Virus record (IMG/VR): IMGVR_UViG_3300032331_003609
Coordinates: 124,001-188,000 of that record
Direction: 5' to 3' (one strand)
DNA: 64,000 nucleotides
Position numbers and translations under genes: made by a program. The stretch's first letter is position 1. Every line of letters begins with the position of its first letter. Below, one piece after another: positions 20,780 through 51,973 of this stretch. Under the pieces are notes generated by a model, which worked only from the letters and a program-made list of their open reading frames with translations, was not told the origin of the DNA and made no database searches.

Positions 20780-21351
20780 TGGATTTTAAAATAGAAATAA
20801 GAGATGCTATAGAGAAAGCTGGATCCCCTGCAAAATTAGCGGAGGAAAGTTTTTTGAATTATTCAAAGAACTATGCAGTACTTACTAGTTCAGAGTCGCT
20901 TAGGAGTTTAGTTCAGGGAAAGATCTACACATTTTATTATGATTCAGATATTAAGGCAGATAAGGGATTTGTTAATAGAAGACCCGTAGTGTTCTTTGAA
21001 TCAAAAGAGATAACCCCATCAAAAAGCATAATAAAAGGAATAGACATGATCTTGCTAAGTCCAAAAGACAGAAAGAATTTCTTCATCCGATTACATTCTA
21101 TTTATGGTAAAATCATGGATCAGAACGAAAAAAGAGATAGATCTGCGCACATGCCTTTAAGATTTGACCCCTCAGTATTAGAAACTTTAATGGGAGGTAT
21201 CAAGTATAATCATGCATACACCGGATACAAAATGGAAAAAATAAAAGGATTAAAGGAAATAGAAAGAGAGGAGTGGAGATATTTAGTCTATCTAAACACC
21301 AAATCTATTGAGGGGGCTGATTTGAACGATATATACAACAAATATCAATAA
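20779..21351 (+). CDS. gp2: DNA end protector, T4 gp2-like
   Basis: GKIYTFYYD...RPVV...G..M..L.PK.R pattern; synteny gp4-gp2-portal. Confidence 0.65.
   Translation: MDFKIEIRDAIEKAGSPAKLAEESFLNYSKNYAVLTSSESLRSLVQGKIYTFYYDSDIKADKGFVNRRPVVFFESKEITPSKSIIKGIDMILLSPKDRKNFFIRLHSIYGKIMDQNEKRDRSAHMPLRFDPSVLETLMGGIKYNHAYTGYKMEKIKGLKEIEREEWRYLVYLNTKSIEGADLNDIYNKYQ
21328..21335 (+). promoter_or_regulatory. Late promoter GATATATA inside the gp2 3' end
   Basis: 15 nt before the portal-1 ATG. Confidence 0.55.
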
Positions 21352-22943
21352 TGGCAGGATTTTTAGGAGATAATAGGAGCAATCCATTTTTTAGTAACGT
21401 TCTAAATAACCTTAGAAAAATAGGTTCTTTTGGAATGAGCTATGGTGACATGGTTGTTAAAAACTCCCAAGCGGTAGGTACTACCGAGGCAATGTTCTTA
21501 AAACAGGGCGGAATTCAGGATGAAAATTTCTTATATGCTTTAAGAAAGGCAGATACCACAGCTAAACAATACATAGCTTATTTTGATAGGGATTACATCA
21601 ATAAGAAAACATATCTTAGAAGCTTTGCACTTAATCCTGAAATAGAATTTATTTTAGATACCGTTTGCGACGAAGCTATTGTATATGATGATAAAAACTT
21701 CTTTTCATATTTTGTATCAACAGATATCAAGGGTATTGGCGAAGAGATGGAACAGCAAATACAAGACAGATATAAAGAAATTTATAGCTTATTTGGCTTT
21801 AATGAAGGAATCTCTGCATGGCACTTTTTTAGGAACTTTTTAATTGATGGGATATTAGCATTTGAAATCATATTTGACTCGAGGGGAAAGAATATTATAG
21901 GATTTAAAGAATTAGATCCTGCATCCTTATTGCCTTCCGTCGAAAAACAACTTGACGGTAATTTCGTAGAATGCTGGATTCAATACCCAGACAATCCCTC
22001 TTTATCTAGAAAATTGTACGATTCACAGATTATTTATATTTCATACGCTAAGGGAAATACAACAACAAGAGTAAGTTATGTAGAAAGATTGATTAGATCT
22101 TTTAATCTATTAAGAATTATGGAGCATACCAGAGTAATTTGGAATGTTATGAATTCATCATATAGAATGACAATGACTGTTCCAGTAGGAACAAAATCCC
22201 CGCAAAAAGCAAAACAATCATTAGCTGAGCTGATGAGCATCTATAAAGAAGATATTAGTCTTAATCAAGATAGCGGTGAGCTTTTTGTGAACGGAAAACC
22301 AAACATTCAGTTCTTTAAAAATTATCTGATGCCGTCTACTCCCAACGGAACACCTGATATAACACCATTAGCAGGAAGCGGAGATGCAACACCTTTTAGC
22401 GATTTAAAAGCTTTAGCATATTTTGCAGATAAGCTTAAATTAGATTCTAAAATTCCATATTCAAGATTTGATAGAGAGGATAGAGGTACACAGGGTACAT
22501 TCAGTGGTAACGCAGAAGGATTAGATCAAGAAGAGATAAGATTCTTTAAATTCATTACAAGATTAAGATCCATCTATCAAGATATACTTCTAAAACCTTT
22601 ATGGATACAATTTTGCTTGGATCATCCAGAGCATAAAAGGGATTTTATGGTTAAGAGCCAATTCGGTTTAGATTATGTTAAAGATAATTCTTTTGCTGAA
22701 ATAAAATATATGGAGATCCTCAATGCAAGAAAAGATCAAGTAACTAAAATTGCAGGTCTTTTAGATGCTGACGGAACACCGTATTTCTCGTTGAATTATG
22801 TACTAGACAAGTATCTTGGAATGACCGATGATGATAAGATAGCTAACGAGAAAGCAAAAGAGGCAGCAGAGAAGAAGAAAAAAGAGAAGGAGAAAGAAGC
22901 AGGAGAAGCAGGAGAAGCACCAGAAGGAGAATTTAAACTTTAA
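21351..22943 (+). CDS. gp20: Portal vertex protein, T4 gp20-like, paralog A
   Basis: PEIEFILD..CDEAIVYD, FR..LIDG.L.F, ELDP, SY.ERLIRSFNLLRIME...VIW, KA.Q....LM..YK, EEIRFFKFI.RLR. Confidence 0.9.
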   Translation: MAGFLGDNRSNPFFSNVLNNLRKIGSFGMSYGDMVVKNSQAVGTTEAMFLKQGGIQDENFLYALRKADTTAKQYIAYFDRDYINKKTYLRSFALNPEIEFILDTVCDEAIVYDDKNFFSYFVSTDIKGIGEEMEQQIQDRYKEIYSLFGFNEGISAWHFFRNFLIDGILAFEIIFDSRGKNIIGFKELDPASLLPSVEKQLDGNFVECWIQYPDNPSLSRKLYDSQIIYISYAKGNTTTRVSYVERLIRSFNLLRIMEHTRVIWNVMNSSYRMTMTVPVGTKSPQKAKQSLAELMSIYKEDISLNQDSGELFVNGKPNIQFFKNYLMPSTPNGTPDITPLAGSGDATPFSDLKALAYFADKLKLDSKIPYSRFDREDRGTQGTFSGNAEGLDQEEIRFFKFITRLRSIYQDILLKPLWIQFCLDHPEHKRDFMVKSQFGLDYVKDNSFAEIKYMEILNARKDQVTKIAGLLDADGTPYFSLNYVLDKYLGMTDDDKIANEKAKEAAEKKKKEKEKEAGEAGEAPEGEFKL

Positions 22944-22946
22944 TAA

Positions 22947-24680
22947 ATGGCAGGATTCATTGACAATTTTTCACAGAGTAACCCAAACATGGGGCGTATA
23001 CTCAAAGCCGTAAGTAAAATCGGAAGCTTCGGAATGGAGTATAAAGATCTTGTTGTGAAAAATTCTCAAGCAATTGGGGTTTCAGAAGCAATGATGAGAC
23101 AAAAATTAGCATTAACAGATTCTGATGAGGATTTTATTTTTAGCCTTGCAGCTGCAGATACCACTAGTAGAAAATACATTGCTTATTTTGATAAAGATTA
23201 TCCATACAAAAGAGATTTTTTAAGAAGCTTTGCACTTAATGCCGAGATAGAATGGATTTTAGACATCCTTGCTGATGAAGCTATAGTTTATGATGACAGA
23301 AATTTTTGCTGCAGTCTATCACTGGTTAATATGGATCTAAAGGATGAAATAGCAGACTCATTGAGGGAGAACTTTAGAAAGATCTATGTCTCCCATGGAT
23401 TTAACAACGGAATTTCAGCTTGGCAGTATTTTAGACAATTTTTAATAGATGGATTTTTATCTTTTGAAATAGTTTATTCAGATGATGGAAAACAAATAGT
23501 AGGATTTAAAGAATTAGATCCAGTTTCATTGACCCCATCTGTAGAGAGAAACCCTGGAGGACAAACTGTTCAAATATGGTATCAGTACTATGGAGACAGT
23601 GTTAGAGAAAGAAAGCTATATGATGCTCAGGTCATATATGTTTCTTTTGCAAATGGTAATGGCACAAGCAGAACAAGTTATGCTGAAAGATTAATTAGAT
23701 CCCATAATCTTCTAAAGATAATGGAGCATACCAGAATCATTTGGAATGTTATGAATGCTTCTTTCCGATTGAAGATGACTATCCCGGTTGGTTCTAGATC
23801 TCCTCAAAAAGCAAAAGAGACATTAGGGGAATTGATGAACATGTATAAGGAGGATATTAAACTTAATACTGATTCCGGAGAATTAAGTATTAACGGACGT
23901 CCAAATTTACAATTTTATAAGAACTATCTTTTCCCTGTCCAAGGAGGAGAATCACCTAAAATAGAGACTATTAATAATGCAGGGCCAAACTTAAATGTTA
24001 TAGATGCTGTGGTTTATTTCTTCAATAAATTAAAAGCAGATTCTAAGATACCATTTAATAGATTCGCTGCTAGATCTGGTGGAACCGTAGGAACATATAA
24101 GATAGGAGCAGAATCTGCAGAAAGGGATGAAATCAGATATAATAAATTCATTAATAGAATTAGATCAATCTATCAAGAGATCATACTAAAACCATTATGG
24201 ATTCAGATGACTTTGGATTATCCTGAACTTGATAAGGATTCTATATTTAGATCCCAATTAGGGCTTAAATTTAACTCCGATAATCAGTTTGGTGAATCTA
24301 AAGAGATAGAACAACTAATTAAGAAAATAGATTTTATAGCAGGACTTTCTGAAATTAAAGAAAAGAAAGGCGAAGAAGAACTTCCTTATTTTAGCCAGGA
24401 TTTTCTTATAGATAAATTTTTAGGATTGACCAACGAAGATAGAAGGGTTAATAATATTTACAAGAAAAAGGAGGAGGAGGAAGGCAAAGCAGCAGCTGCA
24501 ATTTCAGGATCTGCTACACCAGCACCAGCAGGTGGAGGTGACACAGCAACTCCAGCAGCAGAAACTGGAGGCGATGAAGCAGCACCAGCAGCTGAAGCCC
24601 CTGCGGAAGAAGCACCAGCAGCAGAAGCCACACCAGCACCAGCACCAGCAGCAGCAGCAACAGAGACTGAAGCACCTTAA
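22947..24680 (+). CDS. gp20: Portal vertex protein, T4 gp20-like, paralog B with Ala/Pro/Glu-rich tail
   Basis: Same motifs as paralog A along the full length (RDEIRYNKFI.RIR); C-terminal PAAEAPAEEAPAAEA tail. Confidence 0.9.
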   Translation: MAGFIDNFSQSNPNMGRILKAVSKIGSFGMEYKDLVVKNSQAIGVSEAMMRQKLALTDSDEDFIFSLAAADTTSRKYIAYFDKDYPYKRDFLRSFALNAEIEWILDILADEAIVYDDRNFCCSLSLVNMDLKDEIADSLRENFRKIYVSHGFNNGISAWQYFRQFLIDGFLSFEIVYSDDGKQIVGFKELDPVSLTPSVERNPGGQTVQIWYQYYGDSVRERKLYDAQVIYVSFANGNGTSRTSYAERLIRSHNLLKIMEHTRIIWNVMNASFRLKMTIPVGSRSPQKAKETLGELMNMYKEDIKLNTDSGELSINGRPNLQFYKNYLFPVQGGESPKIETINNAGPNLNVIDAVVYFFNKLKADSKIPFNRFAARSGGTVGTYKIGAESAERDEIRYNKFINRIRSIYQEIILKPLWIQMTLDYPELDKDSIFRSQLGLKFNSDNQFGESKEIEQLIKKIDFIAGLSEIKEKKGEEELPYFSQDFLIDKFLGLTNEDRRVNNIYKKKEEEEGKAAAAISGSATPAPAGGGDTATPAAETGGDEAAPAAEAPAEEAPAAEATPAPAPAAAATETEAP

Positions 24681-24738: not shown

Positions 24739-26058
24739 ATGCATAAAGAATTAGAACTGTTATTAGAAATAGAAGGATCCACTGGTGAGGGATCCCAAAA
24801 AAGAAAACAGGAGCTTATCTCCTCTAATCTAACTCCAGAATTGGAGTATATCCTATCAATCTGTTTTGATCCATTTGTTACGACAAAGCTACACAAGCTT
24901 AATTACGGGGATACAGATTCTCAAGAAAATCCAAACCTTTTCAATGAATTCGTTTCATTATGCGAGGAGCTTAAGAAAGCACCAGCGATAAACGACAATC
25001 TAAGGACCAAGGCTGAACGTTTGATTGAATCTACTGGTTATCATACAGAATTAAATAAAGTACTCGCTAAGGTGCTTACAAAGCGAATGAATATAGGGGT
25101 GGGTGCTAAACTCATTAATAAAGCAGTCGGAAAAGAACTAATTCCTGATCCTAGCCTAATGCTAGCAGAAGATGATCATAAAGCCATCGATAAATGGAAT
25201 TCTATTGTTTGTGAAGAAAAATATGATGGCGTTAGGGTTATTTGTGTAATAGAAGACCGAATTCCTAAATTCTATACTAGAGCATTCAATGAACTGAATA
25301 GCAAATTTCTTTCTAAAATAGCAAACCAACTATTAATCATTTCAGAAGGAATAGATGGTATTTTTTTCGACGGGGAGCTTACAGATTTAGACAGGAAGGG
25401 GGTTAGTGGAAAAGTTAATCAAATGTTAAAGGGATCACCAAAAGAGTCCATAGGTGACGATCTTCTTTTTAACACATTCGATATAGATCCTATTACATCT
25501 ATTAGGAACGGCAAGGGAACTACCGCATACACAGAACGTAGAGATTTATTAGAAAAGCTTTTTCAAAATACAGAAACACCTAATATAGTTTTAGCAAGAA
25601 AATGGGAAGCAAAGACCAAGGAGGAATTAATGCCAATTTATGATCAAATAGTAGCTAATGGAGGTGAAGGAGTTATTATGAAAGATCCATCCCATGTATA
25701 TGAATGTAAAAGATCTAAATCTTGGATTAAATTTAAGGAAGTAGAAGATTGTGATTTAGAAGTTACTGGTTGGTATCCCGGTGAAGGAAAAAGGGAAGGA
25801 TTTATTGGAGGATTTAATTGTAAAGATGCATCAGGGGAATATCAGGTAAAAGTTGGATCTGGATTTACAGAAGCAGATCTTATTTCTCTATCTAAAAATC
25901 CTGATTCTTTGATTGGTAGAATTGTAACATTACAATATAACGTCCCTATAGAAGATAAGAACGGTAGTAAATCTTTATTCTTACCTAGATTTATAGAAGT
26001 TAGAAGTGATAAGACAGAACCAGAAAACCTAGTAACAAGATTTAACGAAAAGAAATAA
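24739..26058 (+). CDS. gp30: ATP-dependent DNA ligase (T4 gp30-like)
   Basis: EEKYDGVR (KxDG), FDGEL, GGEGVIMK, WIKFK, OB domain VGSGF...LFLPRF. Confidence 0.95.
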   Translation: MHKELELLLEIEGSTGEGSQKRKQELISSNLTPELEYILSICFDPFVTTKLHKLNYGDTDSQENPNLFNEFVSLCEELKKAPAINDNLRTKAERLIESTGYHTELNKVLAKVLTKRMNIGVGAKLINKAVGKELIPDPSLMLAEDDHKAIDKWNSIVCEEKYDGVRVICVIEDRIPKFYTRAFNELNSKFLSKIANQLLIISEGIDGIFFDGELTDLDRKGVSGKVNQMLKGSPKESIGDDLLFNTFDIDPITSIRNGKGTTAYTERRDLLEKLFQNTETPNIVLARKWEAKTKEELMPIYDQIVANGGEGVIMKDPSHVYECKRSKSWIKFKEVEDCDLEVTGWYPGEGKREGFIGGFNCKDASGEYQVKVGSGFTEADLISLSKNPDSLIGRIVTLQYNVPIEDKNGSKSLFLPRFIEVRSDKTEPENLVTRFNEKK

Positions 26059-27474: not shown

Positions 27475-28605
27475 ATGGTTAGTGTAATTATAGACGGCAA
27501 TTATCTTTTTCATAAGACCTTTGCTATATTTTCAGATTTTGGTGCTAAACAACCAGGTGAGGTTCTTTCTCAAGAAGCTGATCAGGGTATGTTTATGAGA
27601 AAGATAATGACAGATCTTTGTTATTCCCTAAATCAAATCCCGGTAAATGGACATGTAATATTTTGTAAGGATTCTAGATCTTGGAGAAAGGATTTGAAAA
27701 TAGAGAGAGCTGACTATAAAGGATCTAGGGTAAAGGACGAAAAAGTAGATTGGGGATCATTCTTTGATCTAATGGACGAATTTGGAAAATTCTTAGAATT
27801 AAGTGGATATATTTATTCTAAATCTAACGGAGCAGAAGGAGATGATTTACTTTGGTTTTGGAATCAAAAGTTGAGAGGACTAGGTCATAACGTTGTGGTA
27901 TATTCAGGAGACAAGGATAGTCATCAATTAGTTGGGTGTGAAGATACCTGGACTATATGTTGGAATGCTAATTCAAAAAATAATAAAATATTTTGCCCAA
28001 ATAATTGGAAAGAAGATTATCTTGATAAAGAAAGAGAAACGTCTATTTTTAATTTGGACTTTATAGCTGATAATGAAAAGGATAAAATAATGAATTTAAT
28101 ATCATCAGCTACATTAGAATATACTGATCCTATCAGATTGCTATTTGAAAAGATTCTAACCGGAGATAAGGGTGATGATGTTCCAAGCGTTTTTTCCTAT
28201 GAAAAAACACCAGGTAAGATTTTTAAATTGACAAAGGCAAAAGCAGAATCTATCTATGAAAGTTTTAAACAATCAGGATGGGGAAATTCTAGACTAGAAG
28301 ATGTATGGAAAGAAGTCGAGTTCCTAGATTGGATTTCTGGTTATGTTTTAAGATCTTTAAATTACACAGACAACGGAAATAATCGTAAAGAGGTATCTAA
28401 TAACTATCAAGAAAATGCACAGTTAGTTTGGTTATCAGACCAGGTAATTCCAGAGAAGGTTTTAGCTGATATGGAATTTACATACACTACTACAGATCTT
28501 GCGGTTAAACCCGTATTAATAGATAAGAAAAATTTAATTGGCAGATCGAGATGGGATCAATACGAAGCTCCTTCTGCATTTAATCCTTTTAAGAGTTTTA
28601 AATAA
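27475..28605 (+). CDS. rnh: 5'-3' exonuclease / RNase H (FEN family)
   Basis: IIDGN, D..SWRK, YKGSR, EGDD, SGDKD..QL, GDKGDDVP. Confidence 0.88.
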   Translation: MVSVIIDGNYLFHKTFAIFSDFGAKQPGEVLSQEADQGMFMRKIMTDLCYSLNQIPVNGHVIFCKDSRSWRKDLKIERADYKGSRVKDEKVDWGSFFDLMDEFGKFLELSGYIYSKSNGAEGDDLLWFWNQKLRGLGHNVVVYSGDKDSHQLVGCEDTWTICWNANSKNNKIFCPNNWKEDYLDKERETSIFNLDFIADNEKDKIMNLISSATLEYTDPIRLLFEKILTGDKGDDVPSVFSYEKTPGKIFKLTKAKAESIYESFKQSGWGNSRLEDVWKEVEFLDWISGYVLRSLNYTDNGNNRKEVSNNYQENAQLVWLSDQVIPEKVLADMEFTYTTTDLAVKPVLIDKKNLIGRSRWDQYEAPSAFNPFKSFK

Positions 28606-32184: not shown

Positions 32185-32952
32185 ATGAGCGATCAAAAGA
32201 CGGGATTATTAATAAGATTTCCCCTAAGCCCAAAGAAAGGAAAAAAATCCACATACACAGTTTCTTTCTACGGCTTTATGGAAAGAAAAATAGCTGAGGG
32301 AATTAATCTGGGGTACAAATGTTTTATCTTCGAAGTATCTGACGATGATTTCGATGTCCTTGATTTTGAGGTACATGGGGATATTAGACAATCCTTAAAT
32401 TCTTACATACGGGAAGGAATAAGATTGGCAATCTATATAAAGGTAAAAAAATATCTAACATCCGATTCTATTGACGAAATAAATGAAGCACACAGTCAAA
32501 TAACTACGTGCTTGAATTTTGTTAAAAACTTTACTATATCAGATCCTCAAGAATTTCCTATCATTTTACATGTTGGAGGTGCTAAAGGGGATAGGAGAGG
32601 TACCATGGAAGATTTTTGTAAAAAAATAGAAAAATTATTTAATCCAGACGATATCCTGAGTCTTGCTGTTGTTAATGACGAGAAGCCAAGTCTTTTCTCG
32701 GTCAAAGATCTTCTTCCCGGCGTATTTTATAAAATAAGAATTCCTATAGTTTTTAGATCAACGTCATATCCAACTAATCAAGGGAACCTGACACTTAATG
32801 AATCACTATTCCTAGCAGCTTCCACGTGGAAGAGAACGATCAATCCTATTTTTGTTTACCTTCCAGGGAACACCCAAATCAACGGGGATCAAACTAAGCC
32901 ATTTGGTTTAGAATTAGATTTTGTCTTTGATAACAGATTACCCGAACCATAG
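32185..32952 (+). CDS. UV-damage endonuclease (UvsE/UVDE) homolog lacking several catalytic residues
   Basis: IILHVGGAKGD...F......LAVVNDEKPSLFSVKDL..GV...IRIPIVF aligns to UVDE, but ENDD is VNDE and DYHHH is RSTSY. Confidence 0.75.
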   Translation: MSDQKTGLLIRFPLSPKKGKKSTYTVSFYGFMERKIAEGINLGYKCFIFEVSDDDFDVLDFEVHGDIRQSLNSYIREGIRLAIYIKVKKYLTSDSIDEINEAHSQITTCLNFVKNFTISDPQEFPIILHVGGAKGDRRGTMEDFCKKIEKLFNPDDILSLAVVNDEKPSLFSVKDLLPGVFYKIRIPIVFRSTSYPTNQGNLTLNESLFLAASTWKRTINPIFVYLPGNTQINGDQTKPFGLELDFVFDNRLPEP

Positions 32953-32986: not shown

Positions 32987-33003
32987 TGAAAACAAATAAG
33001 GAT

Positions 33004-33825
33004 ATGCCTGAAATCAGCGAAGTAAGAATAATGTCAGACTTTATCAATAAAGTCTCTTCTAAGGTTGACTATTTTATTGGGATCTCTAAAAACCCAGAGC
33101 ACAAAAGCAAAACAATTCTAGTTATTCCGTTTGACCATTTTCAGATTAAAGCATATTCCAGGGGAAAGGAATTGATGATTCGGTTTATAAATCTGGATTT
33201 TTCATATTCTGACATAACCGATTCTAAGCCCCTAGTTTTTACCATGGGTATGAGTGGCAACTGGAATTATTCAAAGAATATGTTTGAAATACCTAAGCAC
33301 ACACATTTTATGATTATGGGTTCTGATGGTAGTGTATTAGGAATGAATGATGTCAGAAGATTTGCCCGTTGGGATTGGCGCAGCTGGAATTCTGAAAGGG
33401 GTCATGATCCTGTTCAGGAGACAGAACTTTTTAAAAAAAATATCTTAGAAAATTTAATGAAGGACAGGGTATTTCAAAAACCTATCTTTGAAGTCATGAT
33501 GAATCAAAAATATTTCAACGGGGTTGGAAATTATCTAAGAGCTGAGATTCTGGGTAGGATAGATTTAGATCCGAGAATATCTGCTAGTGATTATATTACT
33601 CGAGCGGGAGATAAATTTTTTAATATGACAGAAAAAATAATTGTTGAATCATATGAACTTGGGGGAGGTCAATTTAAGGACTGGTATAATCAAGCAGATT
33701 TAGAAAAAAAGAAAAGTAAAGAATTTCAAGCATGGATGCAATTCTATTTCAATAAAGATAGTTGCGTTCCTATCAAAGATAAAAACGATCGTAATTTTTG
33801 GATTGATAAAAAATGGCTAATATGA
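33004..33825 (+). CDS. nei: Fpg/Nei DNA glycosylase/AP lyase, NEIL1-like, zincless finger
   Basis: True start M-P-E (catalytic Pro2/Glu3) at 33004; RGKEL, MGMSG, D.RRF.RW, H2TH FNGVGNYLRAEIL; no Cys4 finger. Confidence 0.92.
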   Translation: MPEISEVRIMSDFINKVSSKVDYFIGISKNPEHKSKTILVIPFDHFQIKAYSRGKELMIRFINLDFSYSDITDSKPLVFTMGMSGNWNYSKNMFEIPKHTHFMIMGSDGSVLGMNDVRRFARWDWRSWNSERGHDPVQETELFKKNILENLMKDRVFQKPIFEVMMNQKYFNGVGNYLRAEILGRIDLDPRISASDYITRAGDKFFNMTEKIIVESYELGGGQFKDWYNQADLEKKKSKEFQAWMQFYFNKDSCVPIKDKNDRNFWIDKKWLI

Positions 33826-34517
33826 TAAGTAAAGACACACTTAAAAAAATTCTATATTTTGATATAGAAACTGCCGGAATTAAAGAAACGTTTTCCGATC
33901 TAAAAAATTCAGATCCTAGACTTGCAAAGATTTGGGAAAAAAGATGTGTCTGGCTAAGAAAGAATTCTGGGGATGAATACAAGGAAGCAACAGAAGATCA
34001 ATTATGGGCAGACAAATCATCATTACATCCAGAATTTGCTAAAGTTGTTTGTATTAGCTTTGGAGCATATAATGGCGATGATGTTAAAATCCAATCAGTT
34101 ATAGGAGAGGAGAATGAAATTCTTGCAAATGCTAATAAGATTTTTAATAATGCAGTATCAAAAGGCTGGAAACTCGGGGGTCACACAATTAAGAATTTTG
34201 ACATACCCTTTGTTGGAAAAAGAATGATCATAAACAGAATAGATCCCTCGCCTTTGATTGGCCAATTAAACAGAAAACCCTGGGATTCTCCAGTAATAGA
34301 TATTTCAGAGATTTTTGCTTTTGGTGGATATGGCCAAACTCATTCTTCTTTGGATCTCATGTGCTCAGTCTTTGGTCATGAATCACCTAAAGATGAAATG
34401 GACGGATCTCTTGTCCATTCATATTTTCACTCAGGAAGAATAGAAGAAATAAAGAAATATTGCGAAATGGACGTTAAGTATCTTATAAAATGCTACGAGT
34501 CATTCTCTTTCGAATAG
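33813..34517 (+). CDS. DEDD 3'-5' exonuclease (PolB-exo2-like)
   Basis: FDIET, LHPEF.K..CI, GH.IKNFDIPF, SLD.M, I..YC..DV. Confidence 0.85.
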   Translation: MANMISKDTLKKILYFDIETAGIKETFSDLKNSDPRLAKIWEKRCVWLRKNSGDEYKEATEDQLWADKSSLHPEFAKVVCISFGAYNGDDVKIQSVIGEENEILANANKIFNNAVSKGWKLGGHTIKNFDIPFVGKRMIINRIDPSPLIGQLNRKPWDSPVIDISEIFAFGGYGQTHSSLDLMCSVFGHESPKDEMDGSLVHSYFHSGRIEEIKKYCEMDVKYLIKCYESFSFE

Positions 34518-34556: not shown

Positions 34557-35303
34557 GTGGTCAATCGTATTAAAAATTTTAAACAGTGGATTTTAAATGA
34601 GGGTGAATTCTATCAGAATGAGCTTAATACCCTTTTTTGGACCAATTCTCAGTTTGATCCCTCTATAAGAGAAAAGCTACTTCAGATCGCTAATGAATTT
34701 TATCAAACGTTCAAATTAGAAATCCCAATCTCCGATATTCAATTAACTGGATCTTTAGCTAACTATAACTGGACACCTAAGTCAGATCTTGACGTTCACG
34801 TCCTAATAGATTTTTCTAAACTTAATCCAGATATTGCTTTAGTTAAAAAGGGAATAGACGGACAAAGATTTATCTGGAACTTAAGACATAATATAGTTAT
34901 GAGAGGACATGATGTTGAATTATATCTTCAAGACGTAAACGAGCCTCACATAGCTTCTGGTCTATTTTCTCTTTTAAATAACGAATGGATAAGAATCCCT
35001 AAGTATAATCCGCCCCAAATAGATGAAATGGATGTGCAAAAGAAGTTTGAGGGAATAGTAAATGATATAGATCAATTAAATGCTAATCTTGAAAGCGGAA
35101 GTTCAGCTATATCTCCGAGGGAGCTTTATGACCATTCAGAAAAGGTTAAATCTAGAATCATGAAAATGAGAAAAGAGGGTCTTGCAGAGAGGGGGGAATT
35201 CTCTGTAGAAAATTTAGTGTTTAAAAAGCTCAGAAACGAAGGATATATACAGAATCTTATCGACCTAATATCCAGGTCATACGAGAAAATTTATAACGAA
35301 TAA
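34557..35303 (+). CDS. Pol-beta superfamily nucleotidyltransferase with capsid-targeting-like N-terminus
   Basis: LTGSLANYNW...SDLDVH (GS..DxD) and DVELY; N-terminus IKNFKQWILNE. Confidence 0.8.
   Translation: MVNRIKNFKQWILNEGEFYQNELNTLFWTNSQFDPSIREKLLQIANEFYQTFKLEIPISDIQLTGSLANYNWTPKSDLDVHVLIDFSKLNPDIALVKKGIDGQRFIWNLRHNIVMRGHDVELYLQDVNEPHIASGLFSLLNNEWIRIPKYNPPQIDEMDVQKKFEGIVNDIDQLNANLESGSSAISPRELYDHSEKVKSRIMKMRKEGLAERGEFSVENLVFKKLRNEGYIQNLIDLISRSYEKIYNE
35242..35249 (+). promoter_or_regulatory. GATATATA inside the NTase 3' end, possible promoter of 35315..37840
   Basis: Exact motif 65 nt upstream of the next start. Confidence 0.4.
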
Positions 35304-46743: not shown

Positions 46744-48177
46744 ATGTGTGGAATACTAATTGCTCATAATCCCTCCGAGGAAAGAATTAAGTCAATATCG
46801 CACAGGGGTATCGAATATTCCACACACTCAGATGCATCGGGATTAACCCTATGCCATCACAGATTGCCTATCCAAACAGCAATAGGTGACGGTTGGATTC
46901 AACCGGTCGAGATATCGAAAGACAAGTACCTTCTATTCAATGGCGAAATTTTTAATTATCCCACGGAGCTATATGATTCAGATACTGCGTATCTAGCTAG
47001 TCTTTTTTCTACCTGCCTAGACTTTTCATCACTTGAGATGTTTAGTGCTCTCTACGAGCCCCATATTAAGAGCTGGGATGGTTTCTGGGCTATTTGTCTG
47101 GTTGATATGAAGACAAAGAACGTTATTTGTTTTACAGACCCTCTAGGTAAGAAGTGCCTATACTATAATGATCTTGGAGAAATCTGCTCTGAAATGAAAG
47201 GACTTATTAATAGTGCTTCTTTCTTAGATAGATCCTTTATGGGCGGTGTAAGAAAATGGGGGTATGTTCCTAATGAATCTACCCCATTTGAAAACATCCA
47301 GAAGATCCGACCAAACTACTTTTATCAATGGAATTTTGCTGCTCCAGACTTCAAGAAGCTATATGGTCCCTATTTCTCATTTAAACCCCCCAAATTTGAG
47401 TTTAATTCTGAGGATGAGATGTTAGATTGGGTTTGGAACAAAGTTGAAGCAGCGACAAAGAATAGACTGTTAAGCTTGGACTATCCTATATCCATCCTGC
47501 TTTCAGGAGGTCTGGATTCATCTATCATTGGTGGGCTTCTTCTTAAGCTAGGTGCGGATGTTAGTTGGTATACCATAAACAACGGACCGGACAATGATTA
47601 TGTCAGAGAATGCGAGAATTATTGGGGTATTAAAGTAAACCAATTGGAATATACAATGAACGAAGATAGTATTAATCTGGATGAATTGTATTTTAAGTGG
47701 AATGAATCTCCTATAGATTTAGGCAGCGTGGTACCACAGTACCTGCTATTTGATGCGATTAAAAAAGGAACAGACACTAGAATAGTCCTATCAGGGGACG
47801 GAGCAGATGAAATGTTTGGAGGATATAGAAGGATAGATGAGTACGACTCACAAGGATCTGATGTTTTCCATGAATTAACATATTACCATTTACCAAGACT
47901 TGATAAAATGAGCATGGCACACACATTAGAGCTTAGAAATCCTTTTCTGAATTTAGAGCTTCTTCAAATGGCACTAAATCTTCCGATGGATTTAAGGAAA
48001 CATAAGACCATTCTTAAGAAAGCATTCAAAGGATTGGTTCCAGATTCTGTTATAGAAAGAAAAAAGCATCCATTAAAGAATGAAAGAATAGTGAAAGATC
48101 CTATGGAATATAGAATAGAAGCTATTGAAAGCTTTAAAAAGGGATACAGCGATTTTTTAGAAAGAGGAGAATATTAA
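46744..48177 (+). CDS. asnB: Asparagine synthase-like glutamine-dependent amidotransferase (AsnB family)
   Basis: N-terminal MCGI, HRG, H.RL.I, FNGEIFNY, LLSGGLDSS, LSGDGADEMFGGY, LELRNPFL. Confidence 0.93.
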   Translation: MCGILIAHNPSEERIKSISHRGIEYSTHSDASGLTLCHHRLPIQTAIGDGWIQPVEISKDKYLLFNGEIFNYPTELYDSDTAYLASLFSTCLDFSSLEMFSALYEPHIKSWDGFWAICLVDMKTKNVICFTDPLGKKCLYYNDLGEICSEMKGLINSASFLDRSFMGGVRKWGYVPNESTPFENIQKIRPNYFYQWNFAAPDFKKLYGPYFSFKPPKFEFNSEDEMLDWVWNKVEAATKNRLLSLDYPISILLSGGLDSSIIGGLLLKLGADVSWYTINNGPDNDYVRECENYWGIKVNQLEYTMNEDSINLDELYFKWNESPIDLGSVVPQYLLFDAIKKGTDTRIVLSGDGADEMFGGYRRIDEYDSQGSDVFHELTYYHLPRLDKMSMAHTLELRNPFLNLELLQMALNLPMDLRKHKTILKKAFKGLVPDSVIERKKHPLKNERIVKDPMEYRIEAIESFKKGYSDFLERGEY

Positions 48178-49661
48178 TAAAGCTCAATTCCTGCTAGAGA
48201 ATCACCTTTTGCATTAAGTGGTGAATAATCTTCTGGTTCATCCGTCAAAAGAAACGTCTTACTTGCATCGACAACTAAACCAGCTATTCCCATAAATCCC
48301 CTGTTAATTAGTATCGGAGTACTTTTGTTAGTTCTATCAACAATAGAAAATTTAACCTTCTTGTAAACCATTTCCCCGAATTCAATATCTAAAAGAATAA
48401 CTGGCCTTTTATCAGTTTGATCCCCAACTTCTGCATGGGAATATTCCATTATTCTGTTACTAAAGGATTTACCCCCAACTGTCCAATTTAAAAATCCATC
48501 AACCTCTTCTGAAAAATCTGCATGAAGAGAACACGCAATAGATCCGTTGCCAGTATCTAATTTACCTATAAATTTGCCAACCCCCTTGATATCAAAGCTC
48601 TCTCTAAATCCCACCATTTTTCGAGGATAATTCCAGTTCTTTTTATCAAGTATAAAATCTAAGATAATTCCTGTTACGTCAAGACCCGTTGCTTTTTCTA
48701 TGCCGTCAGTTCCTGGTGATGCGTTTACTTCTAAAACATATGGTATACCAGTATTTTTTCCAATAATAATATCAACACCACACCACGAGCATTCAGTTGC
48801 TTTAGCAGCTCCTATTGCTATTTTTTCTATCTCTTTAGATATTTCTACTGCCTCTGCTACCCCACCTAAAGACACGTTTGTTCTAAAGTCATTCTCTATT
48901 CTGTGTCTTTTCATAGAGGCTATAATTGTATAATCATCCCCGTCGCCTGTAGAATTTCTAGATCCAACTACGTGTATTCTTAAATCAAAGTCAGCTTCTA
49001 TTTTTTCTTGGACTATTAATTCAGTTTCTGGCGAAAGCTTCCATATTGTTTGTAAAGTTGAGAAAAGAGACGTTTTAGAATCTATCTGAAATACACCTAT
49101 TCCTTTGGTGCCGCTTAATGTTTTTACTACAATAGGGTATTTTCCCCCGATTTTACTCATAGCATTTTCTATATCATCCTCTGATGATATTAAAGCAGTT
49201 TTTGGTGTCGGTATTCCTTTTTCTTGGAGTTTTTGAACAGTGTCTAACTTATCTTCACAAAGAAGTACAGATCTTGGTGAATTCACTGATACAAATCCAA
49301 GAGATTCAAGTTTTTCAAAAAATTTAACAGCTGCTGTTGAGTTTATTGATGATCTTCTAGCAAGTATTGCTGTATTTTTAATATCAATCTCATACTTGTT
49401 GTTGCTTCCTTTATTTCTAATAAAGAAGCTTCCTGTTTCACTTTTTTCGATTTCCCCCTGCGATGTGTTAATTATGATGCATTTAAATCCTAAAGAAGTG
49501 GATTTCTCCATCATTTTTTTAACAGTTGGAGCAAGATAGTTTTTTCTTGATTCTAATTTGGTTGTAAGAATCACAAGGGAAATAGGCTTTTTTGAGCCTA
49601 TCTTTAGATTCTCAGCTCCCTGAAAAACAAAATCATCTTCTTTGGTCAATAAATTATCCAT
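48174..49661 (-). CDS. rimK: RimK-family ATP-grasp ligase fused to C-terminal retropepsin-like (RimB/ATP-dependent Zn-protease family) domain
   Basis: DKL.T...L...GIP.PKT, P.VVK...G..GIGV, DLR..V.G, FR.NVS.GG, GVDII, LEVN.SPG; then KLDTGNG...SLHA...RPVI.LD..F...FSIVDR...ILINR.FM. Confidence 0.9.
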   Translation of the reverse strand: MDNLLTKEDDFVFQGAENLKIGSKKPISLVILTTKLESRKNYLAPTVKKMMEKSTSLGFKCIIINTSQGEIEKSETGSFFIRNKGSNNKYEIDIKNTAILARRSSINSTAAVKFFEKLESLGFVSVNSPRSVLLCEDKLDTVQKLQEKGIPTPKTALISSEDDIENAMSKIGGKYPIVVKTLSGTKGIGVFQIDSKTSLFSTLQTIWKLSPETELIVQEKIEADFDLRIHVVGSRNSTGDGDDYTIIASMKRHRIENDFRTNVSLGGVAEAVEISKEIEKIAIGAAKATECSWCGVDIIIGKNTGIPYVLEVNASPGTDGIEKATGLDVTGIILDFILDKKNWNYPRKMVGFRESFDIKGVGKFIGKLDTGNGSIACSLHADFSEEVDGFLNWTVGGKSFSNRIMEYSHAEVGDQTDKRPVILLDIEFGEMVYKKVKFSIVDRTNKSTPILINRGFMGIAGLVVDASKTFLLTDEPEDYSPLNAKGDSLAGIELY

Positions 49662-49678
49662 CTAAAACTTAATTGATC

Positions 49679-49686
49679 TATATATC
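49679..49686 (-). promoter_or_regulatory. Late promoter GATATATA for the RimK fusion
   Basis: TATATATC on +, 17 nt before the minus-strand ATG. Confidence 0.65.
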
Positions 49687-49696
49687 CTTGGCAAAT

Positions 49697-49726
49697 AAAA
49701 AAGGAGATCTTTGAGGATCTCCTTTT
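49697..49726 (-). terminator. Intrinsic terminator between the Glu-rich gene and rimK
   Basis: AAAAGGAGATC-6 nt-GATCTCCTTTT perfect inverted repeat with T-run on the minus strand. Confidence 0.8.
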
Positions 49727-49749
49727 GTTTATTTTGTTTTAATTTATTG

Positions 49750-50331
49750 TTAATTGAAAAATCTATTAAAAGCAGGGTTTAAAATTTCTTCAGATTCTTC
49801 TTCTTCATGATCCATTTCCTCGCCTTCTTCCATTTCTTCGTGGGTCATTTCTTCTCCTTCCTCCATTTCTTCATCTTCTTCCATTTCTTCCTCATTGACA
49901 TCCGCTTCATCTTCTAGTTCTTCCTCCTCATTATACTCATCTAGGTCAATTTCTTCCTCTTCACCATCCTCTTCATCCTCATCTTCTTCGTTCATATTTT
50001 CTTCCATATCTTCCTCTTCTTCCATACTTTCTTCTTCTTCCTCTTCTTCCATACTTTCTTCTTCTTCCTCTTCTTCTTCCTCGTTATCTGTCATATCATC
50101 AGAAGTGGTATCATCGTCCATATCAAATGAGGAATCTACTCCATCAGTTTCTTCATCTTCTTCTTCTGTTTCATCGTCAGTAGGAATTGAATCTGCACCA
50201 CCATCGGTTTCAGTTTCTTCTTGATCTGCTGTATCTGCAGTGTCCATATCCATTTCTGTATTGTCTTGACCAAGTGTTCCTTCAGTGTATTGTTTAGAAA
50301 ACTCCTCAAAACTTAATATCTTTTTTTCCAT
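49750..50331 (-). CDS. Extremely acidic poly-Glu/Asp protein, putative internal head or core protein
   Basis: 193 aa with runs such as EEEEEEEESMEEEEEEESMEEEE; MEKKILSFEEF N-terminus; GATATATA 18 nt upstream. Confidence 0.8.
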   Translation of the reverse strand: MEKKILSFEEFSKQYTEGTLGQDNTEMDMDTADTADQEETETDGGADSIPTDDETEEEDEETDGVDSSFDMDDDTTSDDMTDNEEEEEEEEESMEEEEEEESMEEEEDMEENMNEEDEDEEDGEEEEIDLDEYNEEEELEDEADVNEEEMEEDEEMEEGEEMTHEEMEEGEEMDHEEEESEEILNPAFNRFFN

Positions 50332-50349
50332 TTTTGAATTATTTATATC

Positions 50350-50357
50350 TATATATC
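50350..50357 (-). promoter_or_regulatory. Late promoter GATATATA
   Basis: 18 nt upstream of the 50331 ATG. Confidence 0.65.
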
Positions 50358-50376
50358 TTTTTGCGTGATCGCATTC

Positions 50377-50610
50377 TTATTCTGCACCCCCTGATTCTAC
50401 TGCTCCGTTGCCTGGATAATCTATCTTAGATTGATTTTTAAAAATAGCGTCCCCATAACCAACATACTCGTAAGGTTTTTCTAATTTAATTTCATGAAAA
50501 GGGGATCTATCCTCTTTACTCATGTTCTTAGGATTCCATGGGTCTGCTATAACTTTTAAGAAGTCTTTAAACTCTAAGATCTCCCTCTTTTTTACGTTTT
50601 TCTGATGCAT
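50377..50610 (-). CDS. Small putative internal head protein
   Basis: 77 aa; ILEFKDFLK motif similar to neighbours. Confidence 0.6.
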   Translation of the reverse strand: MHQKNVKKREILEFKDFLKVIADPWNPKNMSKEDRSPFHEIKLEKPYEYVGYGDAIFKNQSKIDYPGNGAVESGGAE

Positions 50611-50624
50611 CTTTTCTTTTTTTA

Positions 50625-51323
50625 TTATCCTAGTCCTAAAAGACTTAATATTCCAGTATTAGTACTACCTGTTCCGTCGGTCGATTTGGCTGATGTTTTA
50701 GCTGCAGTAGCTAAATCTTTTTCTGAGAATTTTCCGCCTCCAAATATACTTTTGAATGATGTTCCTTCCCCACAAACTATTCCCTCTAATTTAGTTTCTA
50801 GCATAGTTGCAAAAGCGGTAGAGTTTATATAGGTAGTTAATGCCTCTCTTGTTGAAGCTACAAAAGTACCTCCTAAACCAGATTCAAAATTAATGTTTAT
50901 TCCTAATCCTCTAGAAAGTATAAGTGAGATAGCTTTTTCTTCTATTGTTTCTGTTAATCCTAATGTTATTGCTTTTGTCCAATATTTACAAGATCCTGCC
51001 CCGAAATAACTACCAATGTGCATAAATGAGATATTTTCCACTATATTCTTTGCAAATTCACTCATAAACCCACCGTCGTTTGGTAATCCGAATTTGTCCA
51101 AAAGCCATCCAGCAGCATAGTTTTTTAGTCTATCTTCAAATCCACCCATTAATTTACCGCCTAGACCGCTAATTAAATCCCAAAGGCCTTCATTTATTTG
51201 ATCTACTGATTCACCTTTGTGCAGCATATCATTATAATGAGCTTCTAAACCTTCCACTATTCTGAAATATTCTTCGTCTGTTACATTAACCTTTGTAAAT
51301 TCTGAATATTTGATGACTTTCAT
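50625..51323 (-). CDS. Putative internal head / membrane-active protein (true start MKVIKYSEF at 51323)
   Basis: GATATATA 17 nt upstream of this ATG; amphipathic Gly-rich helices (GLWDLISGLGGKLMGG; GILSLLGLG). Confidence 0.75.
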   Translation of the reverse strand: MKVIKYSEFTKVNVTDEEYFRIVEGLEAHYNDMLHKGESVDQINEGLWDLISGLGGKLMGGFEDRLKNYAAGWLLDKFGLPNDGGFMSEFAKNIVENISFMHIGSYFGAGSCKYWTKAITLGLTETIEEKAISLILSRGLGININFESGLGGTFVASTREALTTYINSTAFATMLETKLEGIVCGEGTSFKSIFGGGKFSEKDLATAAKTSAKSTDGTGSTNTGILSLLGLG

Positions 51324-51340
51324 TTCTACTTTATTTTTAT

Positions 51341-51379
51341 TATATATCTCTTCTATAATAATAAAACCAAAGATATATA
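51341..51379. promoter_or_regulatory. Divergent pair of GATATATA late promoters (51341-51348 minus, 51372-51379 plus)
   Basis: Back-to-back exact motifs between divergent genes. Confidence 0.7.
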
Positions 51380-51400
51380 ACCATATAATCAAGTCACCCA

Positions 51401-51973
51401 TTGAAACACCTTCTAAGTTATAGAGATTTATTTGAAAGTACCTCTGCTGGATCCCAGGATAGGGGATCTTCAGATGTGCCTCCGTTCAAGTTTGCTATAA
51501 ACTTCGACCCTAGACTAGGATACACTAAAAACGATTTTGTGCAGGATTTGACTGAGATCTATTTGGGATATCCATTAAAGGACCGTAGAGATCTTATGGA
51601 TGCTGTTTTTAAAAGCGCTGGTGTTTTTAAAATATCAGACATTCAGGATCTTCCGCAGGACAGGGTAGATAAATTAATCAAAAGCGTAGAAGAGTATATG
51701 GAAAGTAAATCCGAGTATAAATTAGAAATACTTCCAGACGGGTTTATTCTTTGCTTTGAGGGGCTTAAACACCGAAAAAGAACTTGTGATGTTTATTACT
51801 CCCCGACGGAAAGAAAAGTAAAAATATCATATACCGACGCCTATCCAGAAAATGAAGAGATAATAATTGGGATAGATGGATTTTCTCCTATATCAGTAGG
51901 AGTTGATAATAACGATTTTATGGCGACGGTTGAAAAGTGCGATGATTATGCTAAAAAGTCTAATCCCTTATAG
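51401..51973 (+). CDS. Hypothetical protein with capsid-targeting-like N-terminus (TTG start)
   Basis: MKHLLSYRDLFE|S; late promoter 21 nt upstream. Confidence 0.7.
   Translation: MKHLLSYRDLFESTSAGSQDRGSSDVPPFKFAINFDPRLGYTKNDFVQDLTEIYLGYPLKDRRDLMDAVFKSAGVFKISDIQDLPQDRVDKLIKSVEEYMESKSEYKLEILPDGFILCFEGLKHRKRTCDVYYSPTERKVKISYTDAYPENEEIIIGIDGFSPISVGVDNNDFMATVEKCDDYAKKSNPL

What the first reader, a model, noticed from the sequence alone, without database searches (positions are those of the whole stretch)
33004..33825. A bacteriophage glycosylase that resembles animal NEIL1
The sequence tracks human NEIL1 as I recall it more closely than bacterial Fpg/Nei. Phage: SRGKEL, FTMGMSG, DVRRFARWD..WNSERG..PVQE..LFKKNIL.NL...VFQKPIFEVMMNQKYFNGVGNYLRAEIL, and a zincless WMQFY...IKDKNDRNFW end. 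NEIL1: ARGKEL, FRFGMSG, DIRRFGRWD...WQPGRG.CVLQEY..FRENVLRNL...FDRPICEALLDQRFFNGIGNYLRAEIL, and DRHGRTIW. A phage member of this clade would bear on the origin of eukaryotic NEIL1 and on phage repair of oxidised or modified pyrimidines.
Basis: partly seen in the sequence, partly recalled or inferred. Interest (0 to 1): 0.75.

Follow-up and report, generated by a model that had tools for sequence, protein, structure and literature searches.

The report
Phage NEIL1-type DNA repair glycosylase
A large freshwater bacteriophage encodes an intact DNA-repair enzyme that matches animal NEIL1 far better than any bacterial Fpg or Nei, and it belongs to a big family in hundreds of phages that is the closest known non-eukaryotic relative of NEIL1.

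Summary
Window 33004-33825 (+) encodes a 273-aa protein starting MPEISE. It matches human NEIL1 at E 5e-28, against 3e-7 for the best bacterial Fpg.

A profile of the phage family hits NEIL1 at 8.6e-70 (238 bits, full length). Fpg, mimivirus Nei1, Nei, NEIL3 and mimivirus Nei2 all score 84 bits or less.

The AlphaFold model (pLDDT 94.5) matches NEIL1 crystal structures at TM about 0.85, including a zincless finger that holds one cysteine.

The catalytic Pro2, Glu3 and Lys55, the void-filling Met83, Arg118 and Phe120, the H2TH motif and the finger arginine Arg263 are invariant in a 32-member family alignment.

The host record is a 245-kb T4-like phage found in lake metagenomes. At least 419 IMG/VR contigs carry relatives. 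A few Candidatus Poribacteria genomes carry chromosomal copies.

In 41 of 80 loci a UvdE UV-damage endonuclease gene lies directly upstream. dN/dS is about 0.07.

In an ML tree the family joins animal, choanoflagellate and euglenid NEIL1 against Fpg/Nei (100/99). Whether eukaryotic NEIL1 is nested in the phage forms or sister to them is unresolved (AU p 0.52).

It is a new member of a known kind, with real evolutionary interest.

The parts
33004..33825 (+). NEIL1-type (zincless-finger) Fpg/Nei-family DNA glycosylase/AP lyase gene, 273 aa plus stop
   Evidence: PF01149 scores 38.2 bits, over its cut-off. NEIL1 scores 5e-28 (single sequence) and 8.6e-70 (family profile). The AF2 model has pLDDT 94.5 and TM about 0.85 to NEIL1 structures.
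33004..33372 (+). N-terminal beta-sandwich catalytic domain (aa 1-123). It holds Pro2, Glu3, Glu6, Lys55, Met83, Arg118 and Phe120.
   Evidence: Pfam PF01149 covers aa 1-123. These residues are invariant in alignment A1. R118 and F120 align position for position with human R118 and F120.
33403..33675 (+). H2TH DNA-binding domain (aa 134-224) with the motif QKYFNGVGNYLRAEIL
   Evidence: Pfam PF06831 covers aa 134-224 at E 3.5e-5, below the gathering score. Q168, N172, G173, G175, N176 and Y177 are invariant. The model shows helices H140-218.
33712..33807 (+). Zincless finger (aa 237-268): a beta-hairpin with Arg263 and only one Cys
   Evidence: This stretch aligns to human NEIL1 252-281, with R263 opposite R277. 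The model has strands 254-258 and 264-268. The region holds one Cys, against four in all zinc-finger outgroups. PF09292 scores 15.3 bits, below its cut-off of 25.
32998..33002 (+). AAGGA, a Shine-Dalgarno-like motif 1 nt before the ATG at 33004
   Evidence: Read directly from the sequence. The spacing is unusually short, so this is weak evidence.
32185..32952 (+). UvdE-like UV-damage endonuclease gene immediately upstream
   Evidence: PF03851 scores 35 bits, over its cut-off of 24. A UvdE homologue lies directly upstream on the same strand in 41 of 80 related viral loci, with a gap of 24-59 nt. The same pairing occurs in L002 and L116.
33813..34517 (+). PolB-exo-like 3'-5' exonuclease gene that overlaps the glycosylase stop by 13 nt
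   Evidence: phrog_25228 scores 5.5e-34 and PF10108 scores 2.2e-12. A homologue is present in 45 of 80 loci.
34557..35303 (+). Nucleotidyltransferase-fold ORF of unknown role, the conserved fourth gene of the block
   Evidence: phrog_36119 scores 9.6e-37. Pfam NTase hits are weak and below cut-off. A homologue is present in 35 of 80 loci at a fixed distance. The AF2 model is poor, pLDDT 67.
27475..28605 (+). 5'-3' exonuclease / flap endonuclease gene, a possible downstream repair step
   Evidence: PF02739 scores 41.7 bits. A homologue lies within 6 kb in 30 of 80 loci.
24739..26058 (+). ATP-dependent DNA ligase gene, a possible sealing step
   Evidence: PF01068 scores 6.7e-21 and PF14743 also hits. 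A homologue lies within 6 kb in 28 of 80 loci.

Best explanation
The gene encodes a functional bifunctional DNA glycosylase/AP lyase of the NEIL1 subfamily of the Fpg/Nei (H2TH) superfamily, carried by a large T4-like freshwater phage.

Proposed mechanism:
- After the initiator Met is removed, the secondary amine of Pro2 attacks C1' of a flipped-out damaged base. Glu3 and Lys55 assist.
- A Schiff-base intermediate forms, and the strand is cut by beta,delta-elimination.
- Met83, Arg118 and Phe120 fill the gap left in the helix.
- The H2TH motif and Arg263 of a zincless beta-hairpin hold the phosphates around the lesion.

By analogy with NEIL1, the likely substrates are oxidised or saturated pyrimidines, formamidopyrimidines and hydantoins, possibly also in single-stranded or fork DNA.

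The gene sits in a conserved block, UvdE - glycosylase - 3'-5' exonuclease - NTase, with a FEN and a ligase nearby. The phage therefore probably brings its own short excision-repair route for sunlight damage (UV dimers plus photo-oxidised bases) to its DNA. UvdE, an Nfo-like enzyme reported to clean 3'-blocking ends, or the exonuclease would remove the 3'-phosphate left by the lyase.

What is shown: homology, fold, conserved residues, synteny and purifying selection. What is inferred: enzymatic activity, substrate range and the hand-over to UvdE.
For: - Sequence: NEIL1 scores 5e-28 against 3e-7 or weaker for Fpg and Nei. The family profile scores 8.6e-70 against NEIL1 over 256 of 263 positions; the next best score is 84 bits. 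In the reciprocal direction, tuatara NEIL1 hits the phage forms at 174-178 bits and 36-38% identity, and Fpg/Nei at 53 bits or less.
- Fold: pLDDT 94.5. The top 50 PDB matches are all human NEIL1, with TM 0.75-0.90 (0.80-0.87 for the near-complete chains).
- Residues: P2, E3, E6, K55, M83, R118, F120, N172-Y177 and R263 are invariant in 32 diverse members. There is no Cys4 site.
- Selection: dN/dS is 0.06-0.08 against five relatives. No indels appear in three other lake data sets.
- Context: a UvdE gene lies directly upstream in 41 of 80 loci, an exonuclease is present in 45 of 80, and one T4-like contig carries DenV in the neighbouring position instead.
- UvdE activities on AP sites and 3'-blocking ends are described in PMC8307549.
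- Habitat: sunlit fresh water, in at least 10 studies.
Against: - No biochemical data exist for any member of the phage family.
- The window protein alone misses Pfam's gathering scores for H2TH and Neil1-DNA_bind.
- Lesion-pocket residues of human NEIL1 are not conserved. K/R242 aligns with Gly221, Y244 with Phe223 and R257 with Gln242, so the substrate range may differ.
- The metatranscriptome run held no contig on the gene, which is uninformative either way.
- No PNK-type 3'-phosphatase and no PolA or PolB polymerase was detected in the 86%-complete record, so the pathway downstream of the lyase is conjecture.
Confidence: 0.8

Rival explanations
1. The enzyme is used in phage-host conflict and not for repair. 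For example, it could excise a base from host DNA or from a modified or foreign DNA, or process a phage-specific modified pyrimidine.
For: Phages do use glycosylases and nucleases against host DNA (general knowledge). The lesion-pocket residues differ from human NEIL1. The neighbouring exonuclease and NTase have no assigned role.
Against: The tight, widespread pairing is with UvdE, or with DenV in one contig. Both are dedicated UV-lesion enzymes. Chromosomal copies sit among housekeeping genes in Poribacteria and are the only Fpg/Nei-family gene found there. I looked for no base-modification genes, so none can be cited in support.
Confidence: 0.1
2. It is an ordinary bacterial-type Fpg (8-oxoG/Fapy glycosylase) or Nei picked up from the host, and the NEIL1 likeness is superficial.
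For: It belongs to the same superfamily, and Pfam's best hit is the generic Fapy_DNA_glyco domain. Other phages (SP-10, phage G) do carry true zinc-finger Fpg genes.
Against: There is a gap of about 150 bits between NEIL1 and every Fpg or Nei in the profile search. It has no zinc finger. It separates from Fpg/Nei at 100/99 in the tree. Identity to the phage Fpgs is only 25-28%.
Confidence: 0.03
3. It is a eukaryotic NEIL1 fragment that reached the contig through mis-assembly or contamination, or through a very recent capture from a eukaryote.
For: The best-characterised relatives are animal proteins.
Against: The GC content and strand match the neighbours. The gene overlaps the next phage gene by 13 nt. 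The same locus was recovered in many independent lake data sets. Hundreds of phage contigs carry relatives with conserved synteny. Identity to any eukaryote is only 33-34%. It has no C-terminal tail and no introns.
Confidence: 0.02
4. It is a catalytically dead DNA-binding relic.
For: None specific. The activity is untested.
Against: All catalytic and DNA-contact residues are invariant across the family. dN/dS is about 0.07.
Confidence: 0.03

Closest known systems
Human/metazoan NEIL1 (endonuclease VIII-like 1; PDB 1TDH, 5ITX, 6LWx)
   Same: - Two-domain Fpg/Nei fold with a zincless finger, TM 0.80-0.87 over the whole protein.
- About 30% identity to human NEIL1 and 33-34% to other animal NEIL1s.
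- Same residues at P2, E3, E6, K54/55, M81/83, R118, F120, the H2TH motif and the finger Arg (R277/R263).
- They form one family in the tree.
   Different: - It lacks the roughly 100-aa disordered C-terminal interaction tail; the protein ends 10 residues after the finger arginine.
- It lacks an insert of about 15-20 aa between the H2TH motif and the finger.
- Position 5 is Ser and not the usual Pro.
- The pocket residues K/R242, Y244 and R257 are Gly, Phe and Gln.
- It is encoded by a bacteriophage in an operon with UvdE.
Mimivirus Nei1 (MvNei1, L315; PDB 3A42, 3A45, 3VK7), the characterised viral 'NEIL1 orthologue'
   Same: It is a virus-encoded, zincless-finger Fpg/Nei enzyme.
   Different: It is much more distant. 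The phage-family profile scores it at 84 bits (1e-22), the same as bacterial Fpg, against 238 bits for NEIL1. The literature places MvNei1 outside the metazoan Neil1 clade (PMC3188539). Its host is a eukaryote.
Bacterial Fpg/MutM and Nei (E. coli, L. lactis, Geobacillus), and the Fpg genes of Bacillus phages SP-10 and G
   Same: Same superfamily, the same N-terminal Pro/Glu chemistry and the same H2TH motif.
   Different: They have a Cys4 zinc finger in place of the zincless hairpin. Identity is only 25-28%. They are separated at 100/99 in the tree.
Chromosomal NEIL1-like genes of Candidatus Poribacteria (for example L007, L008)
   Same: Same family, 39-41% identity, about 270 aa and zincless. 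They cluster inside the short (phage-type) forms.
   Different: They sit among bacterial housekeeping genes with no UvdE neighbour. They were found in only 4 of 101 sampled genomes of that phylum.

Membership tests
Fpg/Nei (H2TH) glycosylase superfamily | N-terminal Met-Pro-Glu, with Pro2 as nucleophile and Glu3 as catalytic acid | tested here: met
   The protein starts MPEISE. M1, P2, E3 and E6 are invariant in 32 members.
Fpg/Nei (H2TH) glycosylase superfamily | Pfam Fapy_DNA_glyco N-terminal domain above the gathering score | tested here: met
   PF01149 scores 38.2 bits against a cut-off of 25.5. The genome search gives 38.8 bits.
Fpg/Nei (H2TH) glycosylase superfamily | Helix-two-turn-helix motif | tested here: met
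   PF06831 hits at E 3.5e-5 (24.2 bits), below its cut-off of 34.7. The motif residues N172, G173, G175, N176 and Y177 are invariant, and the modelled helices superpose on NEIL1.
NEIL1 subfamily | Zincless finger: a beta-hairpin without Cys4 that carries the DNA-binding Arg (human R277) | tested here: met
   The finger region holds one Cys, against four in the zinc-finger outgroups. R263 aligns with R277 and is invariant. The model shows a hairpin at 254-268.
NEIL1 subfamily | Pfam Neil1-DNA_bind (PF09292) above the gathering score | tested here: not met
   The window protein scores 15.3 bits against a cut-off of 25. Many family members do carry the precomputed PF09292 hit, and the family profile aligns through this region to NEIL1.
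NEIL1 subfamily | Void-filling triad Met81, Arg118 and Phe120 | tested here: met
   M83, R118 and F120 are invariant in the family and aligned to the human residues.
NEIL1 subfamily | Groups with bona fide NEIL1 to the exclusion of Fpg, Nei and other subfamilies | tested here: met
   The family plus eukaryotic NEIL1 separates from Fpg/Nei at 100/99. The profile scores NEIL1 at 238 bits and Fpg, MvNei1, plant Fpg, Nei, NEIL3 and MvNei2 at 84 bits or less. NEIL2, NEIL3, MvNei1 and plant Fpg could not be put in the tree because no sequence handle was available.
NEIL1 subfamily | Lesion-recognition loop residues of human NEIL1 (K/R242, Y244, R257) | tested here: not met
   These align to G221, F223 and Q242. 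The alignment within loops is approximate.
NEIL1 subfamily (metazoan form) | Long disordered basic C-terminal tail that binds partner proteins | tested here: not met
   The protein is 273 aa and ends 10 residues after the finger arginine. The eukaryotic members are 311-568 aa.
NEIL1 subfamily | Glycosylase with beta,delta-lyase activity on oxidised pyrimidines, Fapy lesions and hydantoins, and poor activity on 8-oxoG | not testable with these tools
   This needs enzyme assays.
Bacterial Fpg / Nei | C-terminal Cys4 zinc finger | tested here: not met
   There is a single Cys in the C-terminal 37 aa.

The most novel reading that the evidence does not exclude
Eukaryotic NEIL1 arose from this zincless family of aquatic phages (and a few bacteria), through transfer of a phage- or bacterium-borne gene into an early eukaryote. 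On this reading the phage proteins are living relatives of the NEIL1 ancestor and not a side branch.

- The free ML tree, rooted on Fpg/Nei, nests a single eukaryotic clade inside the phage forms.
- The root-proximal phage forms keep Pro5, as both outgroups and eukaryotes do.
- A tree with phage forms and eukaryotes as sister groups fits equally well (AU p 0.52).
Probability: 0.3. Interest if true: 0.75.

Novelty: new member of a known kind. Interest (0 to 1): 0.55.

Why it matters
NEIL1 has been treated as a metazoan clade ('MeNeil1'). Its only viral counterpart was the distant mimivirus Nei1 (PMC3188539). Eukaryotic H2TH glycosylases are usually assumed to have come from bacteria through mitochondria (PMC8307549).

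Here a very large, diverse and strongly conserved phage family, plus a patchy bacterial offshoot, turns out to be the nearest relative of NEIL1 outside eukaryotes. This has three consequences:

- It gives a concrete set of sequences for testing where NEIL1 came from.
- It offers small, tail-less, probably easy-to-express NEIL1-type enzymes for structure and function work.
- It shows that freshwater and marine phages carry a combined UV (UvdE) and oxidised-base (Nei) repair cassette. That bears on how virions and replicating phage DNA survive sunlight.

It does not reveal a new mechanism.

Tried and rejected
- **GenBank phages (50,697 records).** Only distant zinc-finger Fpg genes at 28% identity or less, and no nucleotide match to the region. 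BFVD viral structures likewise held only Fpg-type hits at 21% identity or less.
- **Expression.** One lake metatranscriptome holds short contigs on the upstream genes but none on the glycosylase, so nothing can be concluded.
- **Promoter and terminator scan.** No better than shuffled sequence for promoters, so not used.
- **3'-end-cleaning kinase/phosphatase and repair polymerase in the phage.** PF08645, PF00136 and PF00476 found nothing in the 86%-complete record.
- **Structure of the conserved NTase-fold neighbour.** The AF2 model is too poor (pLDDT 67) for a fold search, so I dropped it.
- **Polarity of phage versus eukaryote.** The free tree nests eukaryotes among the phage forms, but the AU test does not reject reciprocal monophyly, so I make no claim of direction.
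- **GTG start at 32986.** Rejected because it would bury the catalytic Pro, and every homologue starts at MPE.
- **Literature.** I found no paper on NEIL1-type enzymes in phages or Poribacteria in the searchable library. A jumbo-phage survey lists only DenV and UvdE as sporadic repair genes. Absence from this library is not proof that the family is undescribed.
- **Tree composition.** NEIL2, NEIL3, MvNei1 and plant Fpg could not be added because no tool gave me their sequences by reference. I used PDB profile scores in their place.

Full report
**1. What is there**

Window 33004-33825 (+) is an intact ORF of 273 codons that begins MPEISEV. The ORF lister starts it at a GTG at 32986. That start would put six residues in front of the Pro that must be N-terminal in Fpg/Nei enzymes, and all homologues begin at MPE, so I take 33004 as the start. 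An AAGGA lies just upstream.

The window is bases 124001-188000 of a 244,850-bp IMG/VR virus record, estimated 86% complete. It carries two T4 gp20-type portal genes, a prohead protease, a gp23 capsid gene, an ATP-dependent ligase, a clamp-loader-like ATPase and a FEN. It is therefore a large T4-like phage. Near-identical DNA occurs in lake and freshwater metagenomes from more than ten studies.

**2. Is the NEIL1 likeness real?**

Yes, by four independent measures.

- **Single-sequence search of the PDB.** Human NEIL1 scores 5.1e-28 (colinear over 1-194, plus the C-terminal finger). E. coli Fpg scores 2.7e-7, mimivirus Nei1 1e-6 and E. coli Nei 0.017.
- **Family profile (32 diverse phage-type members).** NEIL1 scores 8.6e-70 (238.6 bits), with profile positions 1-256 of 263 against residues 1-282. 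The runners-up are L. lactis Fpg and MvNei1 at about 1e-22 (84 bits), plant Fpg 3e-21, E. coli Nei 2e-13, NEIL3 3e-9 and MvNei2 4e-9.
- **Fold.** An AlphaFold2 model with pLDDT 94.5 and pTM 0.91 has human NEIL1 as all of its top 50 PDB matches. TM is 0.75-0.90 (0.80-0.87 for the near-complete chains), over about 275 columns at about 30% identity.
- **Reciprocal search.** A vertebrate NEIL1 (Sphenodon, P0260) hits phage-type proteins at 174-178 bits and 36-38% identity, full length. It hits Fpg/Nei at 53 bits or less.

**3. Functional residues**

The following are invariant in alignment A1 (window-protein numbering):

- M1, P2, E3 and E6
- G54, K55 and E56
- G82 and M83
- D116, R118 and F120
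- R132, Q168, N172, G173, G175, N176 and Y177
- P190
- R263

These correspond to the NEIL1 nucleophile and acid (P2, E3), K54, the void-filling M81, R118 and F120, the H2TH motif, and the zincless-finger R277 (alignments).

The finger region has one cysteine, whereas all zinc-finger outgroups have four. The model shows the expected hairpin at residues 254-268.

There are four differences from human NEIL1:

- There is no C-terminal tail.
- An insert of about 15-20 residues between the H2TH motif and the finger is absent.
- Position 5 is Ser and not Pro.
- The human lesion-loop residues K/R242, Y244 and R257 align with Gly221, Phe223 and Gln242.

The gene is under strong purifying selection: dN/dS is 0.057-0.082 against five relatives. 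It has no indels in three other lake assemblies.

**4. How widespread it is**

- The 90%-clustered protein collection holds at least 958 relatives. JGI names many of them 'endonuclease VIII-like 1', and many carry PF09292.
- The exhaustive search of 50% representatives gives 969 hits at E 1e-3 or better, and 85 at 1e-30 or better.
- IMG/VR holds 419 contigs that encode relatives, some over 300 kb long.
- The nearest ESM-Atlas clusters are 84-95% viral (Uroviricota).
- Three short forms were traced to contigs. Two (P0160, P0177) lie in phage-like gene contexts; the third (P0187) sits alone on a 1-kb contig that gives no context.

By contrast, one genome from each of 185,579 prokaryotic species yields only 11 loci, all in MAGs. 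Seven of these are in Candidatus Poribacteria.

The Poribacteria copies are chromosomal. They have conserved bacterial neighbours: sulfatases, an RlmL-type methyltransferase, YkuD, PhoH, CorC and others. They are the only PF01149 gene in those MAGs. They are also patchy: 4 of 101 sampled genomes of the phylum have one, while 9 others gave only a weak match (E 1e-8 to 1e-16). The eight of those that I read are canonical zinc-finger Fpg/Nei genes.

GenBank phages and the BFVD viral structure set contain no close relative.

**5. Genomic context and likely role**

The gene directly upstream, 32185-32952, is UvdE-like (35 bits, over its cut-off). The gene downstream, 33813-34517, overlaps the glycosylase stop by 13 nt and is a PolB-exo-like 3'-5' exonuclease. 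It is followed by an NTase-fold ORF.

Counts among 80 related viral loci:

| Neighbour | Loci with it |
|---|---|
| UvdE homologue immediately upstream, same strand, gap 24-59 nt | 41 |
| 3'-5' exonuclease | 45 |
| NTase-fold ORF | 35 |
| FEN | 30 |
| Ligase | 28 |

One T4-like contig has T4 DenV in the position next to the glycosylase instead.

UvdE incises at UV dimers. It is also reported to cut AP sites and to clean 3'-blocking ends (PMC8307549).

My best reading is a phage-borne sunlight-damage repair cassette. The NEIL1-type enzyme removes photo-oxidised bases and nicks by beta,delta-elimination. UvdE or the exonuclease restores a 3'-OH. FEN, a polymerase and the ligase finish the repair. 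The steps after homology, fold and synteny are inference.

**6. Phylogeny**

The tree has 93 rows and was built with IQ-TREE under LG+C20+F+G4 (PMSF). The bootstrap had not fully converged.

- The phage-type forms plus eukaryotic NEIL1 (86 rows) separate from E. coli Fpg and Nei, phage Fpgs and zinc-finger Nei-like proteins at 100/99.
- All eukaryote-length sequences form one clade at 100/94.
- The labelled members of that clade are Sphenodon, amphioxus, sea urchin, Hydra, a tardigrade, three molluscs, a crab, two choanoflagellates (one on a 1.9-Mb Salpingoeca scaffold) and a euglenid.
- The window protein sits with P0036 (100/97) and P0062 (97/81) among the phage forms.

With the outgroup root, the eukaryotic clade is nested among the phage forms. 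The root-proximal phage forms (P0160, P0187, P0227) share Pro5 with the outgroups and with eukaryotes. Only 19 of 100 phage-type forms keep Pro5.

However, a tree constrained to keep all short forms together is not rejected, and its likelihood is slightly better (AU p 0.52, delta lnL 2.67). So 'one family with NEIL1' is solid. 'NEIL1 descends from phage forms' is open.

Rows left out of the trees:

- From both trees: fragments and sequences lacking a recognisable N-terminus or finger (listed).
- From the careful tree: about 40 redundant or very long-branched rows (listed in the script).

**7. Comparison with what is known**

The protein works like, and by most defining features is, a NEIL1-type enzyme. 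It fails three features: the metazoan C-terminal tail, the Pfam PF09292 threshold for this single sequence, and the human lesion-loop residues.

The literature I could search treats Neil1 as a metazoan clade, with MvNei1 lying outside it (PMC3188539). I found no paper on phage or Poribacteria NEIL1-like genes. Automatic annotation has, however, already given the family the right name.

**8. Verdict**

The finding is a real feature and was correctly read. It is a new member, in fact a large phage-borne branch, of a known enzyme kind.

It is interesting mainly for the origin of NEIL1 and for phage photodamage repair, not for a new mechanism. Interest 0.55.

Noticed in passing
window 21351-22943 and 22947-24680: Two tandem paralogues of the T4 gp20-type portal protein (Pfam Portal_T4, 5e-66 and 2.5e-63). 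This is unusual for a tailed phage.
   Followed up: no
window 13854-15941: A 695-aa protein with collagen triple-helix repeats lies in the only GC-rich stretch of the window (GC 0.43 against about 0.34). It is followed by a Laminin_G_3 lectin-fold protein. It is probably a fibre.
   Followed up: no
window 34557-35303: An NTase-fold ORF (phrog_36119, with weak MTPAP-like and NTP_transf_2 hits). It is conserved as the gene after the exonuclease in 35 of 80 related loci. The AF2 model is too poor (pLDDT 67) to assign a function.
   Followed up: partly
whole record G000 (244,850 bp): No Pfam PolA, PolB-polymerase or PNK 3'-phosphatase domain was detected, although a stand-alone PolB-exo-like exonuclease is present. 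The record is 86% complete, so the polymerase may be missing or divergent.
   Followed up: partly
L007 6001-6813, L008 6001-6828 (Candidatus Poribacteria MAGs): Chromosomal NEIL1-like genes in conserved bacterial synteny. They are the only Fpg/Nei-family gene in those MAGs. The distribution within the phylum is patchy (4 of 101 genomes), which suggests transfer between phages and this lineage.
   Followed up: partly
L114 (Campylobacter phage A11a, MG065691, UNVERIFIED record): Its Fpg-like ORF is identical to E. coli K-12 MutM in my alignment. This points to contaminating E. coli sequence in that record.
   Followed up: no
L116 9878-10321: A related phage contig encodes an SmpB homologue (the tmRNA partner) a few genes from its UvdE/glycosylase pair.
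   Followed up: no
window 33379-33403: A dense cluster of substitutions in other lake populations. It falls in the loop just after the RRFARW intercalation motif (aa about 126-134), while the rest of the gene is conserved.
   Followed up: no
window 48174-52696: A block of minus-strand genes with inverted GC skew interrupts an otherwise plus-strand window.
   Followed up: no
L119 10819-11190: In a 114-kb T4-like contig the glycosylase is followed directly by a T4 endonuclease V (DenV, Pyr_excise) gene instead of being preceded by UvdE. The UV-repair partner differs but the pairing logic is the same.
   Followed up: partly
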